This document shows positions 1-51,003 of a stretch of DNA of 64,000 nucleotides, one piece after another (position 1 is the stretch's first letter; each line of letters starts with the position of its first letter). The stretch is from Chrysemys picta bellii. Taxonomy: Eukaryota. The notes under the pieces were generated by a model. That model saw nothing but the letters and a program-made list of their open reading frames with translations. It searched no databases and was not told the origin of the DNA. The stretch is from contig NC_088794.1 in NCBI RefSeq assembly GCF_011386835.1, positions 6,200,001 through 6,264,000 of the forward strand. Reading direction: 5' to 3'. The position numbers and the translations under genes were made by a program.

Positions 1-736
1 CGCAGGTGGAGAAGGTCTTGTGCCTGCCTGTGGCAGAGTGGATCTTCAGGATGGCGGCGAGGATATAGATGTAAGAGAGGATGATTCCTGTGAAGGTGCC
101 TAGCAAAACAAAGGCACACAGAAAAACAATGGCAATCCCAATGATATGATGGTCACTGCACGCCAGCCTCAGAACGGGCGAGATGTCACAGAAGAAATGT
201 CTGATGGCATTGGGCCCACAGAAGGGCAAACTGAATATAAGGGAACTGATGCCTAGTGCTATAAGAAAGCCAGTTGCACATGAAACGGCGACCAGCTCAA
301 CGCAAACCCTCCTGTTTATCACAACTGGGTATTGCAGCGGCTTACATATGGCCACATAGCGATCGTAAGCCATGGCGGACAGCAGGAAACAATTTGTGCC
401 CCCGAAGCCAAAGAAGCAGAACATTTGAGCAGCGCATCCCAGGAAAGAAATTGTTTGGTTTCCCGACAGCAAACTCACCAGCAGCTTGGGGACGACAGCC
501 ATAGTGGTGCAGGTTTCCGAGAAGGACAAAGCGAAGAGTAAGAAGTACATGGGGGTATGGAGGCTCCGATCAACACTGATGGCTGCCATGATGGTGATGT
601 TGGAGGTCAGGATTATCACGTACACCGGGGAGAACACCAGGAAAAGCAGAACCTGCCGCTCTTCCAGACTGGAGAATCCCAGCAGCAGAAATAGAGACAC
701 GGTGCTCTCATTTCCTCTGGGCATCATCAAAAGCAT
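1..736 (-). CDS. Olfactory receptor, OR10-like, N-terminal 245 codons (truncated by window edge)
   Basis: ATG at 736-734. Colinear without indels with 50047-50782; 6 nt differences counted, none creating a stop. Motifs LHTPMYF, MAYDRYVAIC, KTFSTCA. Confidence 0.9.
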   Translation of the reverse strand, partial: MLLMMPRGNESTVSLFLLLGFSSLEERQVLLFLVFSPVYVIILTSNITIMAAISVDRSLHTPMYFLLFALSFSETCTTMAVVPKLLVSLLSGNQTISFLGCAAQMFCFFGFGGTNCFLLSAMAYDRYVAICKPLQYPVVINRRVCVELVAVSCATGFLIALGISSLIFSLPFCGPNAIRHFFCDISPVLRLACSDHHIIGIAIVFLCAFVLLGTFTGIILSYIYILAAILKIHSATGRHKTFSTC

Positions 737-1126
737 CTAAACTCAAGGGGGAAAAGGAGGCAAAAAATCTTAGGAGCTATACAACACCATCAGAGTTGCT
801 TCCTTAGCTCCAACACAGCCTCAGACATGATCAAATGATTGGTGTGAAGGAACTAAAACAAGCCCAAGACTACTGATTTGTTTCTATTGTATTTTATAGT
901 CATGTATTCATTGCTCAGATATTGAAGTGGTGAGAGCCCACTTAAGGAGCTGGGTAGATTGACTGATTTATTGATTGATTTATAAAAGTTACGGTAGTAA
1001 CATTAGCTTTGGCTGCAATATGCTCTGGTTCTGGGAAGGTGTTACAGTATGGACAATGACAATGTAAGTTTATCCCAACCAATTTCCTCAGCTTGACTCC
1101 ACTTTGTTTCAGAAGGATCACTTCTA

Positions 1127-1350
1127 AAGAATGTAAGAACGGCCATACAGGGTCAGAACAAAGGTCCCTCTAGCCCAGTATCCTCTCTTCCGACAGTGGC
1201 CAATGCCAGGTACCCCTGAGGGAATGAACAGAATGGGTAATCATCAAGTGATCCATTCCCTGTCGTTCATTCCCAGCCTCTGGCAAACAGAGGCTAGGGA
1301 CACCATCCCTGCCCATCCTGGCTAATAGCCATTGATGGATCTATCCTCCA
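1127..1350 (-). mobile_element. CR1 LINE 3' fragment (mirror ~49430-49625)
   Basis: CR1 3' UTR sequence ending in an ttcttacattctt-type tail. Confidence 0.75.
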
Positions 1351-1897
1351 AGAGGGATCAAGACTTCATGGACTATTTATTATTATGACAGTTATTTAGG
1401 TAGCATCCAGGAACCTTACCATAAACCAGAATCTATTGTGCTAGATGCTGTACAAAAACAGAACAAAAAAAACCCAGTTCCTGCCCCCAAAAGCTTACAA
1501 TTTAAGTACAAGACAATAGACAATAGGTGGGTGCAGACTGATGGATGGAGGAGTACAAGGAAGCAACGAGATGATAGGCAGTGGCTGTAGCACACCATCT
1601 GCCTAGCTACGGTCAATGTTTTTATAGTTATCCGAGAAGAGGAGAGTTTTATTTAGTCCTTTTATTGTCTGTTGCAAGTTCCCAAAGAAGGGTAATGTAT
1701 GCCACTCATAAGGGGTGTTATTAATACCAAAAGATATGCCCCAGGAATTATTTTGGGAAGTTCTCTAGCCTGTGATATACAGGAGATCAGTCTAGATGAT
1801 CACAATTGTCCCTTCTGGCCTTAGACTCTATGAATCTCTGCGGGGAAAAAATGATGTTGGCACGTGTCTATTAGCAACTGGACAGAACATAGAACTG

Positions 1898-2010
1898 GGA
1901 GTTAGTGGACCTGATTTCTGTTCCCAGCTCTGCCACTGGCTTTCTTCATGACCGTGGGCAAGACACTTCACCTCCCTGTGCCTCATCTGTAAGATGGGGG
2001 AAATTGTGCT
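1898..2010 (+). mobile_element. MIR/CORE-type SINE (mirror ~48545-48660)
   Basis: gacctgatttctgttcccagctctgccactgg...gaccgtgggcaagacacttcacctccctgtgcctcatct. Confidence 0.75.
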
Positions 2011-2021
2011 CACATGGTTTT

Positions 2022-48084: not shown

Positions 48085-48530
48085 GAGTCATGTGGAGAAA
48101 GTGAATAAGGAAAAGTTATTTACTGGTTCCCATAATATAAGAACTAGGGGCCACCAAATGAAATTAATGGGCAGCAGGTTTAAAATAAATAAAAGGAAAT
48201 TCTTCTTCACACAGAGCACAGTCAACCTATGGAACTCCTTGCCTGAGGAGGTTGTGAAGGCTAGGACTATAGCAGGGTTTAAAAGAGATAAATTCATGGA
48301 GCTTAAGTGCATTCATGGCTATTTGCCAGGATGGGTAAGGAATGGTGTCCCTAGCCTCTGTTTGTCAGAGGGTGGAGATGGATGGCAGGAGAGAGATCAC
48401 TTGATCATTACCTGTTAGGTTCACTCCCTCTGGGGCACCTGGCATTGGCCACTGTCGGTAGACAGGATACTGGGCTGAATGGACCTTTGGTCTGACCCAG
48501 TATGGCCATTCTTATGTTCTTAAAACCATG
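48085..48530 (+). mobile_element. CR1 LINE 3' fragment (mirror of 2022-2465)
   Basis: Same ORF2 C-terminal remnant and tail. Confidence 0.9.
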
Positions 48531-49047
48531 TGAGCACAATTTCCCCCATCTTACAGATGAGGCACAGGGAGGTGAAGTGTCTTGCCCACGGTCATGAAGA
48601 AAGCCAGTGGCAGAGCTGGAACAGAAATCAGGTCCACTAACTCCCAGTTCTATGTTCTGTCCAGTTGCTAATAGACACGTGCCAACATCATTTTTTCCCC
48701 GCAGAGATTCATAGAGTCTAAGGCCAGAAGGGACAATTGTGATCATCTAGACTGATCTCCTGTATATCACAGGCTAGAAAACTTCCCAAAATAATTCCTG
48801 GAGCATATCCTTTGGTATTAATAACACCCCTTATGAGTGGCATACATTACCCTTCTTTGGGAACTTGCAACAGACAAAAAAGGACTAAATAAAACTCTCC
48901 TCTTCTCGGATAACTATAAAAACATTGACCGTAGCTAAGCAGATGGTGTGCTACAGCCACTGCCTATCATCTCATTGCTTCCTTGTACTCCTCCATCCAT
49001 CAGTCTGCACCCACCTGTTGTCTATTGTCTTGTACTTAAATTGTAAG

Positions 49048-49266
49048 AAGAAGAACAGGAGTACTTGTGGCACCTTAGAGACTAACAAATTTATTAGAGC
49101 ATAAGCTTTCGTGGACTACAGCCCACTTCTTCGGATGCATATAGAAGAAGTGGGCTGTAGTCCACGAAAGCTTATGGTCTAATAAATTTGTTAGTCTCTA
49201 AGGTGCCACAAGTCCTCCTGTTCTTCTTTTTGCGGATACAGACTAACACGGCTGCTACTCTGAAAC
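49048..49266. mobile_element. Penelope-like hairpin insertion with hammerhead-like motif, right arm only
   Basis: 13-bp TSD cttaaattgtaag (49035-49047 / 49267-49279); empty site in left arm at ~1494-1507. Confidence 0.88.
49098..49140 (-). ncRNA. Minimal hammerhead ribozyme-like motif (best-preserved copy)
   Basis: Minus strand GCAU-CCGAAGA-A-GUGGGC-UGUA-GUCCAC-GAAA-GCUU-AUGC: CUGANGA-like core, 6-bp stem II, GAAA, palindromic stem III, 4-bp stem I. Core deviates at U4 (C) and has an extra A. Confidence 0.6.
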
Positions 49267-50046
49267 CTTAAATTGTAAGCTTTTGGGGGCAGGAACTGTT
49301 TTTTGTTTGTTCTGTTTTTGTACAGCATCTAGCACAATAGATTCTGGTTTATGGTAAGGTTCCTGGATGCTACCTAAATAACTGTCATAATAATAAATAG
49401 TCCATGAAGTCTTGATCCCTCTTGGAGGATAGGTCCATCAATGGCTATTAGCCAGAATGGGCAGGATGGTGTCCCTAGCCTCTGTTTGCCAGAGGCTGGG
49501 AATGACCGACAGGGAATGGATCACTTGATGATTCCTGTTCTGTTCATTCCCTCTGGGGCACCTGGCATTGGCCACTGTCAGAATAAAGGATACTGGGCTA
49601 GATGGACCTTTGTTCTGACCCAGTCTGGCTTTTCTTATGTTCTTTAGAAGTGATCCTTCTGAAACAAAGTGGAGTCAAGTTGGGGAAATTGGTTGGGATA
49701 AACTTACATTGTCATTGTCCATACTGTAACACCTTCCCAGAACCAGAGCATATTGCAGCCAAAGCTAATGTTACTACCCTAACTTTTATAAATCAATCAA
49801 TAAATCAGTCAATCTACCCAGCTCCTTAAGTGGGCTCTCACCACTGCAATATCTGAGCAATGAATACATGACTATAAAATAAAAGATAAAATACAATAGA
49901 AAAAAATCAGCAGTCTTGGGCTTGTTTTAGTTCCTTCACACCAATCATTTGATCATGTCTGAGGCTGTGTTGGAGCTAAGGAAGCAACTCTGATGGTGTT
50001 GTATAGCTCCTAAGATTTTTTGCCTCCTTTTCCCCCTTGAGTTTAG

Positions 50047-51003
50047 ATGCTTTTGATGATGCCCAGAGGAAATGAGAGCACCGTGTCTCTATTTCTGCTG
50101 CTGGGATTCTCCAGTCTAGAAGAGCGGCAGGTTCTGCTTTTCCTGGTGTTCTCCCCGGTGTACGTGATAATCCTGACCTCCAACATCACCATCATGGCAG
50201 CCATCAGTGTTGATCGGAGCCTCCATACCCCCATGTACTTCTTACTCTTCGCTTTGTCCTTCTCGGAAACCTGCACCACTATGGCTGTCGTCCCCAAGCT
50301 GCTGGTGAGTTTGCTGTCAGGAAACCAAACAATTTCTTTCCTGGGATGCGCTGCTCAAATGTTCTGCTTCTTTGGCTTCGGGGGCACAAATTGTTTCCTG
50401 CTGTCAGCCATGGCTTACGATCGCTATGTGGCCATATGTAAGCCGCTGCAATACCCAGTTGTGATAAACAGGAGGGTTTGCGTTGAGCTGGTCGCCGTTT
50501 CATGTGCAACTGGCTTTCTTATAGCACTAGGCATCAGTTCCCTTACATTCAGTTTGCCCTTCTGTGGGCCCAATGCCATCAGACATTTCTTCTGTGACAT
50601 CTCGCCCGTTCTGAGGCCGGCGTGCAGTGACCATCATATCATTGGGATTGCCATTGTTTTTCTGTGTGCCTTTGTTTTGCTAGGCACCTTCACAGGAATC
50701 ATCCTCTCTTACATCTATATCCTCGCCGCCATCCTGAAGATCCGCTCTGCCACAGGCAGGCGCAAGACCTTCTCCACCTGCGCCTCCCACCTCATCGTTG
50801 TGATCACACACTTCAGCTGTGCTTTTTTTGTGTATTTAATACCCAAATCAACCGCTTCCCTAGATGAGGACACTTTGATTGCCTTGTCTTATACCTTGTT
50901 TAGTCCTATGTTGAACCCTGTGGTTTATAGTCTGAGAAACAGGGAAGTTAAATCAGCCCTAAGGAAATTAACTGCCCACACATTTCTTTCTCCAAAAATG
51001 TGA
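50047..51003 (+). CDS. Olfactory receptor, OR10-like, 318 aa, intact
   Basis: [71 protein letters not shown]. Subfamily assignment is from motif resemblance only. Confidence 0.95.
   Translation: MLLMMPRGNESTVSLFLLLGFSSLEERQVLLFLVFSPVYVIILTSNITIMAAISVDRSLHTPMYFLLFALSFSETCTTMAVVPKLLVSLLSGNQTISFLGCAAQMFCFFGFGGTNCFLLSAMAYDRYVAICKPLQYPVVINRRVCVELVAVSCATGFLIALGISSLTFSLPFCGPNAIRHFFCDISPVLRPACSDHHIIGIAIVFLCAFVLLGTFTGIILSYIYILAAILKIRSATGRRKTFSTCASHLIVVITHFSCAFFVYLIPKSTASLDEDTLIALSYTLFSPMLNPVVYSLRNREVKSALRKLTAHTFLSPKM

What the first reader, a model, noticed from the sequence alone, without database searches (positions are those of the whole stretch)
1..50782. Giant palindrome (arms of at least 19-21.6 kb) duplicating two OR genes
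Seen: 1-21640 mirrors 31774-50782 around a ~10 kb spacer; each arm has one OR5-like and one OR10-like gene. A sampled non-coding block (14881-15180 vs ~37552-37851) has 11 mismatches in 300 bp. Established: palindromic amplicons on mammalian sex chromosomes maintain gene pairs by arm-to-arm conversion. Inference: inverted duplication is one route of OR expansion at this locus.
Basis: partly seen in the sequence, partly recalled or inferred. Interest (0 to 1): 0.75.

Follow-up and report, generated by a model that had tools for sequence, protein, structure and literature searches.

The report
Inverted OR-gene duplication beside scaffold gap
Two mirror-image, 98%-identical copies of a block of smell-receptor genes in the painted turtle assembly are most likely real but ordinary gene-family duplicates, and their "giant palindrome" layout rests on a Hi-C scaffolding join that could not be verified.

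Summary
The inverted repeat is in the sequence as described. Positions 1-21640 mirror 31774-50782: 18,633 aligned bases, 97.9% identity, 395 mismatches, 38 indels. Each arm carries an OR5-like and an OR10-like gene.

Both ends of the repeat are artificial. The left arm is cut by the window start and stops exactly at the 500-N gap. The window is painted turtle assembly SLU_Cpb5.0 (hifiasm at about 20x HiFi, then 3D-DNA, which writes 500-N joins). Adjacency and orientation of the arms therefore rest on the scaffolder.

Divergence of 2.1% is about four times this animal's heterozygosity and matches the painted turtle-slider distance. Each arm has its own transposon insertion. The OR10-like gene has seven distinct near-identical sequences in this one diploid assembly, so at least four loci. 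The right copy is basal and the left copy belongs to a younger subgroup.

- **Real paralogues in a lineage-specific amplification:** about 0.6, of which head-to-head layout as drawn about 0.4 overall.
- **Retained haplotig:** about 0.3.

It is not a conversion-homogenised palindrome. Only one 1,209-bp identical tract exists. The scan's unchecked notes list other gap-adjacent duplications elsewhere in this genome. Ordinary; low interest.

The parts
1..21640 (-). Left copy (L) of the OR block. It is cut by the window start and ends at the scaffold gap. It is the reverse complement of 31774-50782.
   Evidence: 97.88% identity over 18,633 aligned columns
21641..22140 (.). 500-N scaffolding gap (contig join). 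Its true size and content are unknown and were not looked up.
   Evidence: PMC13077969 names 3D-DNA as the Hi-C scaffolder
22141..31773 (+). The so-called spacer: the start of the right-hand contig. It is single copy within the window and has no internal repeats. It may partly belong to the duplicated unit, because L is truncated.
   Evidence: no repeats; contigs of four organisms run collinearly across 31774
29361..30998 (+). Olfactory receptor pseudogene in the spacer, frameshifted and interrupted by high-copy repeat.
   Evidence: tblastn; depth spikes at 30114-30716
31774..50782 (+). Right copy (R) of the OR block, visible part. Homology continues at least 221 bp further and probably to at least 60814.
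   Evidence: the C-terminal 73 aa of L-copy protein P0004 match R 72/73; P0009/P0017 twin
1..736 (-). OR10-like gene, L copy. These are the first 245 codons; the rest lies upstream of the window. This is protein P0004.
   Evidence: 242/242 identical to P0004
11582..12520 (-). OR5-like gene, L copy, 312 aa, intact.
40205..41149 (+). OR5-like gene, R copy, 314 aa, intact. The stop codon is shifted by two codons.
50047..51003 (+). OR10-like gene, R copy, 318 aa, intact. It is the basal member of the painted-turtle family.
59879..60814 (+). Third OR (5AR1/1019-like, P0009). Its 99% identical twin XP_065451864 lies on the same chromosome, probably as the mirror copy upstream of the window.
11681..12889 (-). 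1,209-bp tract identical to 39836-41044. It covers the first 840 nt of the OR5-like CDS plus 369 bp upstream. It is a conversion or recombination tract.
   Evidence: next longest tract 284 bp
39836..41044 (+). Partner of the identical tract in R.
4223..6159 (.). About 1.9 kb present only in L. It is non-coding, has no clear target-site duplication, and has a poly-C at its left edge.
6573..6809 (.). Fold-back element inserted only in L, with a 13-14 bp target-site duplication.
15753..16519 (.). 766 bp present only in L. The junction in R shows a short AGGTATC repeat. Whether this is an insertion or a deletion is undecided.
49047..49279 (.). Element of the same fold-back family inserted only in R, with a 13-bp target-site duplication.
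33336..33675 (.). 102-bp tandem repeat, 3.3 copies in R against 2.3 copies in L (19841-20078).

Best explanation
L and R are two real paralogous copies of a multi-gene olfactory receptor block. The block holds an OR5-like gene, an OR10-like gene and probably a third OR. It is at least 21.6 kb long and probably at least 29 kb. The copies arose by segmental duplication on the painted turtle (Chrysemys picta) lineage, inside an array that now holds at least four loci of the same OR10-like gene.

R, which is continuous with the so-called spacer, is the ancestral copy. L belongs to a younger subgroup of copies. Since they split, the two copies have drifted apart by about 2%. Each has picked up its own transposon insertion. 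They have exchanged sequence once, over 1.2 kb covering the OR5-like promoter and most of its coding region (non-allelic gene conversion).

The head-to-head layout with a 10-kb spacer comes from a Hi-C scaffolder joining two contigs. It may be right (about 0.4 overall) but is not shown. The left copy could also be misoriented, misplaced within the array, or continue into the gap.

Shown: the sequence relations, the gene content, the private insertions, the conversion tract and the copy-number floor. Inferred: paralogy rather than allelism, the ancestry of R, and the arm extent beyond the window.
For: 1. Divergence is 2.12% and fairly even at 2-2.5% per kb over 19 kb. Heterozygosity of the sequenced animal is 0.48-0.71%, and C. 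picta and T. scripta are 98.2% identical (PMC13077969).
2. Each arm has a private insertion of the same fold-back element with a clean 13-14 bp target-site duplication, and two further large indels separate the arms.
3. There are seven distinct OR10-like protein sequences in this single diploid assembly: four on the chromosome and three on unplaced pieces. That requires at least four loci. There are three distinct P0009-type sequences, requiring at least two loci.
4. With T. scripta, Malaclemys and Terrapene orthologues as outgroups, all seven copies share derived I199. Six copies, including L, share derived T310, while R keeps ancestral A310. L differs from XP_065451862 by 1 aa but from R by 5 aa. 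L and R are therefore not nearest relatives, which simple allelism would predict.
5. In the inner 1.5 kb of the arm, contigs of four other organisms carry the L letter at 6 of 22 L/R diagnostic sites, and L and R share 4 letters seen in none of them. Both copies therefore descend from one ancestor within the window's lineage, and each has private changes.
6. Unplaced pieces of 1.9-6.5 kb carry near-identical OR copies and are shorter than one 14-kb HiFi read. This suggests the array was hard to assemble and was cut by the scaffolding tools, which would explain a contig break here without invoking a haplotig.
Against: - The left copy ends exactly at a 500-N scaffold gap. A gap between duplicates is one of the four hallmarks of false duplication (PMC9516828).
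- The primary assembly is 35-43 Mb larger than either haplotype assembly, HiFi depth was only ~20x, and no purging step is described.
- First-reader notes of this scan, unchecked, list many other gap-adjacent duplicates over normally single-copy genes in the same genome.
- The phylogenetic argument rests on one or two amino-acid sites.
- In all four laid runs the arm and spacer contigs have the same k-mer depth and one contig per place, so no independent data set shows two copies. These are bubble-popped contigs of coded organisms, probably other genera, so this neither proves nor excludes a second copy.
- No read or molecule spanning both arms was available.
Confidence: 0.6

Rival explanations
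1. False (heterotype) duplication. L is the second haplotype of the R region. Hifiasm kept it in the primary assembly because the two haplotypes are unusually divergent here. 3D-DNA then dropped it next to its allele in the wrong orientation, bounded by 500-N gaps. The animal would then have one copy of this block per chromosome.
For: - L ends exactly at the 500-N gap.
- A gap between duplicates is a listed hallmark of false duplication (PMC9516828).
- The assembly used ~20x HiFi with hifiasm, then tigmint/ARCS, then 3D-DNA, with no purge step mentioned. The primary assembly is 35-43 Mb larger than hap1 or hap2, and heterozygosity is described as high.
- The 90% cluster of the OR5-like gene holds exactly two sequences, L and R.
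- Unchecked scan notes report similar gap-bounded duplicates over SKIV2L, KDM5C, L1CAM, FFAR2 and others in this genome.
- No laid run shows two contig types in the arm.
Against: - Even 2.1% divergence over 19 kb is about four times the mean heterozygosity and equals the intergeneric distance. With normal recombination a 19-kb average that high is very unlikely for alleles.
- There are two private transposon insertions plus two large indels in 19 kb.
- L is closer to another placed locus (1 aa) than to R (5 aa), and R alone keeps the ancestral residue at position 310.
- At least four loci of this gene exist anyway.
- The contig does not converge to identity towards its end, as a closing bubble would. 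Divergence is 1.4% in the last 1.5 kb.
Confidence: 0.3
2. A true palindrome of the sex-chromosome type. The two arms would sit around a short unique spacer on one DNA molecule and be kept alike by continuing arm-to-arm gene conversion. This is the model the first reader drew on.
For: - Mirror symmetry of gene order in the assembly.
- One 1,209-bp identical tract centred on the OR5-like gene, far longer than chance allows. The expected maximum is ~260 bp and the probability is about 1e-10.
Against: - Arm identity is 97.9%, with even divergence and only one tract.
- Private insertions persist in both arms.
- The pair is part of a family of at least four loci, not a two-arm structure.
- Continuity across the centre is not shown, because of the gap.
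Confidence: 0.05

Closest known systems
Inverted segmental duplications (low-copy repeats) in vertebrate olfactory receptor clusters, e.g. the OR-containing inverted repeats flanking the human 8p23.1 inversion (PMC5088589, PMC2701327; found, abstracts only)
   Same: These are tens of kb of inverted, more than 90% identical sequence carrying OR genes. They are part of a multi-copy, recently amplified array, show occasional non-allelic gene conversion, and are hard to assemble.
   Different: Here the arms are only about 10 kb apart at most, rather than megabases. No inversion polymorphism is known. The inverted layout rests on a scaffolding join and has not been confirmed.
False heterotype duplications in vertebrate assemblies (Ko et al. 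2022, PMC9516828)
   Same: A duplicate abuts an assembly gap on the same scaffold, in a gene family region, in a relatively heterozygous individual whose assembly was not explicitly purged.
   Different: Divergence is about four times the mean heterozygosity. L is nearer to another locus than to R. Read depth, 1-copy k-mers and linked-read discordance, the other three criteria, could not be tested.
Ampliconic palindromes of mammalian and avian sex chromosomes
   Same: Long inverted arms hold paired genes, and there is one conversion tract.
   Different: Those palindromes have more than 99.9% arm identity through continuing conversion. Here identity is 97.9%, the block lies in an OR cluster on a 156.6-Mb chromosome-scale scaffold, and the pair belongs to a larger multi-locus family.
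Tandem OR array growth by unequal crossing-over, as other follow-ups of this scan describe in the same genome (s1-335719, s1-328312; unchecked here)
   Same: It is the same gene family, the same genome and recent lineage-specific copies.
   Different: Those are head-to-tail units inside contigs. This pair is head-to-head across a gap.

Membership tests
Olfactory receptor genes (Pfam 7tm_4) | An intact ~310-aa single-exon ORF that matches PF13853 above the gathering score | tested here: met
   165-176 bits against a cut-off of 27 for all four ORFs
Inverted segmental duplication | At least 1 kb at 90% identity or more, in inverted orientation in the assembled sequence | tested here: met
   18.6 kb aligned at 97.9%
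Inverted segmental duplication | Both copies present in cis on one haplotype of the real genome | not testable with these tools
Conversion-maintained palindrome (sex-chromosome type) | Arm-to-arm identity of about 99.9% or more | tested here: not met
   97.88%; 2-2.5% per kb in non-coding sequence
Conversion-maintained palindrome (sex-chromosome type) | A unique spacer flanked by both arms in one continuous sequence | tested here: inconclusive
   The left arm is cut off by the 500-N gap. The spacer has no internal symmetry.
Conversion-maintained palindrome (sex-chromosome type) | Evidence of arm-to-arm gene conversion | tested here: inconclusive
   There is one 1,209-bp identical tract. Allelic exchange would look the same.
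False heterotype duplication (PMC9516828) | An assembly gap between the duplicated pair on the same scaffold | tested here: met
False heterotype duplication (PMC9516828) | About half read depth on each copy, and haplotype-specific 1-copy k-mers | not testable with these tools
   No raw reads of the source individual were served, and the tool warns that contig depth is not copy number.
False heterotype duplication (PMC9516828) | The two copies are each other's nearest relatives, at allelic-range divergence | tested here: not met
   Divergence is 2.1% against 0.48-0.71% heterozygosity. At the OR10-like gene L is 1 aa from XP_065451862 and 5 aa from R. The support is weak, one or two sites.

The most novel reading that the evidence does not exclude
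The layout is real: an autosomal palindrome in the painted turtle with arms of at least 29 kb and three OR genes each, and a spacer of at most 10 kb. It would have formed millions of years ago and be otherwise free to diverge, yet gene conversion has homogenised exactly the promoter and first 840 nt of one receptor gene. That would mean selective or hotspot-driven homogenisation of a single OR pair inside an old inverted duplication. It could also make the intervening segment prone to inversion.
Probability: 0.3. Interest if true: 0.4.

Novelty: new member of a known kind. Interest (0 to 1): 0.2.

Why it matters
If real, it is one more documented case of olfactory receptor repertoire growth by segmental duplication, here lineage-specific to the painted turtle and possibly inverted. 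It is useful for counting turtle OR genes but not surprising.

The practical point is a caution. In this reference assembly (SLU_Cpb5.0), duplicates that abut 500-N joins cannot be taken at face value. Three of the annotated OR genes here, and any gene-family expansion counts that include them, depend on whether the left contig is a paralogue or a retained haplotype.

Tried and rejected
- **The look-up of encoding contigs** was closed. I could not fetch the sequence upstream of the window, the unplaced contigs or other assemblies. The outer boundary and the size of the left contig remain unknown.
- **The look-up of sequencing runs** served only Logan contigs of seven coded organisms, with a best word share of 0.68. 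None behaves like the source animal.
- **Read laying**. I first read 'one contig per place at spacer-like depth' as proof that relatives have a single-copy arm. I withdrew that, because these contigs pop bubbles and the tool states they show presence, not absence. Depth ratios are reported only as weak evidence.
- **Coded organisms.** I tried to identify them from years, sizes and divergence. The result was not conclusive.
- **Palindrome centre.** I looked for one at the start of the right contig and for internal symmetry in the spacer. There was none.
- **Coding content of the L-only insertions.** None found.
- **Rfam.** No family reached the gathering score anywhere in the window.
- **The search of earlier findings.** It does not accept places before the window start.
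- **L as a haplotig of the upstream XP_065451862 locus.** Rejected as unlikely, because no third OR5-like sequence at 90% identity or more exists.
- **The gap.** It was not filled or looked up anywhere.
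Full report
**What is there**

The window has one N run, 21641-22140. The repeat finder and a blastn self-comparison show a collinear chain of inverted matches between 1-21640 and 31774-50782. A global alignment of the two arms gives 18,633 aligned columns, 97.88% identity, 395 mismatches (231 transitions, 164 transversions) and 38 indel events.

Four intact ORFs are olfactory receptors by Pfam 7tm_4:
- An OR5-like pair at 11582-12520(-) and 40205-41149(+). They are 309/312 identical.
- An OR10-like gene at 50047-51003(+). Its mirror copy starts at 736 and runs off the window start.
- A third receptor at 59879-60814(+).

The spacer holds an OR pseudogene and no internal repeats.

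**Both boundaries are artificial**

The left arm begins at window base 1 and ends at the last base before the gap. Protein P0004 is the annotated left-arm OR10-like product. It matches the window's 242 codons exactly, and its remaining 73 residues match the right copy at 72 of 73. The arms therefore run on beyond the window start.

P0009, encoded at 59879-60814, has a 99% identical twin, XP_065451864, on the same chromosome. The accession order is 862, 864, then the window's genes. This fits mirror symmetry with three genes per arm and arms of at least 29 kb. That is an inference from accession order only.

Inward, nothing can be said. The '10-kb spacer' is an upper bound, because the left copy simply stops at a contig end. 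I did not look up or fill the gap.

**Where the sequence comes from**

The window's proteins sit on a 156,561,005-bp sequence together with proteins named Chrysemys picta bellii, XP_0654.... The matching paper is PMC13077969, which describes assembly SLU_Cpb5.0 = GCF_011386835.1. It reports:
- hifiasm assembly of about 20x HiFi reads of about 14 kb
- scaffolding with tigmint/ARCS and then 3D-DNA
- manual Bionano corrections
- no haplotig purging step mentioned
- primary assembly 2.372 Gb, against 2.337 and 2.329 Gb for the two haplotype assemblies
- heterozygosity 0.48-0.71%
- 98.2% identity to Trachemys scripta

The 500-N gap fits a Hi-C scaffolding join (3D-DNA was the scaffolder; the 500-N convention is my own knowledge). 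Order and orientation of the left contig therefore rest on the scaffolder.

**Artefact or real?**

*For a retained haplotig:*
- A gap between duplicates is one of the four hallmarks listed by Ko et al. (PMC9516828).
- The assembly has excess sequence and low HiFi depth.
- This scan's unchecked first-reader notes list several other gap-bounded duplicates over normally single-copy genes in this genome. One follow-up judged such a case a retained haplotype.

*Against a retained haplotig:*
- Divergence is 2.1% and fairly even, at 2-2.5% per kb in non-coding sequence. That is about four times the animal's mean heterozygosity and as large as the painted turtle-slider distance.
- Each arm carries its own insertion of the same ~235-bp fold-back element with a clean 13-14 bp target-site duplication. 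Two further large indels separate the arms.
- The OR10-like gene exists as seven different sequences in this one diploid assembly: the two arms, XP_065451862 and XP_065451851 on the chromosome, and three on unplaced pieces. At least four loci are therefore real.
- With slider, terrapin and box turtle orthologues as outgroups, all seven copies share a derived I199. Six copies, including L, share a derived T310. R alone keeps the ancestral A310 and has two private changes.
- L differs from XP_065451862 by one residue and from R by five. R therefore looks like the original copy and L like a member of a younger subgroup. Simple alleles of one locus should instead be each other's nearest relatives. 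This rests on one or two sites and is suggestive only.

**What the public runs add**

Only Logan contigs of seven coded organisms were served. The best share of words was 0.68. I laid four of them on 27300-33300, which is the spacer plus the inner 1.5 kb of R.

- In all four, contigs cross 31774 collinearly. The R-arm/spacer junction is therefore the shared, presumably ancestral, arrangement.
- At 6 of the 22 L/R diagnostic sites in that stretch the runs carry the L letter.
- At four other sites L and R share a letter that none of the runs shows. L and R therefore descend from a common ancestor on the window's own lineage, and each has private changes. This fits either a lineage-specific duplication or deep alleles.
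- Arm and spacer contigs have the same k-mer depth, with one contig per place. These contigs pop bubbles, and the tool warns that they show presence, not absence. I do not count this as proof of single copy.

An asymmetry remains unexplained. Nearly all differences from the closest run are sites where all four organisms agree against the window. Either these are other genera with very unequal branch lengths, or the contigs are majority consensus of a multi-copy family.

**The identical tract**

Positions 11681-12889 (partner 39836-41044) are identical over 1,209 bp. The next longest identical stretch is 284 bp, and about 260 bp is the expected maximum at this density. The tract covers the first 840 nt of the OR5-like CDS and 369 bp upstream. 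All four coding differences lie after it. It is a single exchange event. If the copies are paralogues it is non-allelic gene conversion. It does not make this a homogenised palindrome.

**Why a contig break is expected here anyway**

The unplaced pieces carrying near-identical OR copies are 1.9, 6.0, 6.5 and 22.7 kb. Three of these are shorter than one HiFi read. They cannot be raw hifiasm contigs and must come from cutting by tigmint or 3D-DNA. This is an inference. The array was evidently hard to assemble and was cut and rejoined. That weakens the argument that a gap next to a duplicate implies a haplotig. It equally weakens trust in the drawn orientation.

**Verdict**

| Reading | Probability |
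|---|---|
| L and R are real paralogues from a painted-turtle-specific amplification of an OR block | about 0.6 |
| — of which the head-to-head layout is correct as drawn | about 0.4 overall |
| Retained haplotig | about 0.3 |
| Conversion-maintained palindrome of the sex-chromosome kind | effectively excluded by 97.9% identity |

Inverted and tandem segmental duplications in OR clusters are well known (for example 8p23.1, abstracts only). Even the favourable reading is therefore a new member of a known kind. The nearest cluster of other turtle receptors to the OR5-like pair is only 87% identical. That is a small curiosity and was not pursued.

**Limits**

- No raw reads of the source animal were available.
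- No sequence outside the window could be read.
- The gap was left untouched.

Noticed in passing
window 6573-6809 and 49047-49279: Two independent insertions of the same ~235-bp fold-back element, one private to each arm. Each has a clean 13-14 bp target-site duplication (TGTAGGAATAATG and CTTAAATTGTAAG), and the other arm has an empty site. The two copies are 95.5% alike. No Rfam family, hammerhead included, reaches the gathering score in the window.
   Followed up: partly
window 29361-30998 (+): An olfactory receptor pseudogene in the spacer. It is frameshifted and split by about 770 bp of very high-copy repeat. A further OR fragment lies at 62655-62753.
   Followed up: partly
proteins P0005, P0006, P0008, P0019 (unplaced contigs of 22,679, 5,962, 6,543 and 1,945 bp): Near-identical OR copies sit on unplaced pieces, three of them shorter than a single HiFi read. 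This implies that the scaffolding tools cut this array and left debris. These pieces may hold the missing continuation of the left copy.
   Followed up: no
window 27300-33300: Nearly every difference between the window and the closest run is a site where three other organisms share the same non-window letter. The window copy has about 0.85% private changes and that run almost none. In that run, minor contigs of depth ~15-21 carrying the window letter sit beside major ones of ~110-240. The contigs may be a multi-copy consensus. Unresolved.
   Followed up: partly
window 11582-12520 and 40205-41149: The OR5-like pair has no relative above 87% identity among cluster representatives from any other annotated turtle, and its 90% cluster holds only these two proteins. 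The neighbouring OR10-like gene, by contrast, has 99% orthologues in Trachemys and Malaclemys.
   Followed up: no
window 40205-41149: In the right OR5-like copy the stop codon TGA reads TGG, which extends the ORF by two codons (314 against 312 aa). All four coding differences lie in the last 100 nt, just outside the identical tract.
   Followed up: yes
window 3000-4222: A local divergence peak of 4.4-4.7% between the arms lies next to a (TA)n run at 3586-3650 and the ~1.9-kb L-only segment. This is about twice the arm average.
   Followed up: no
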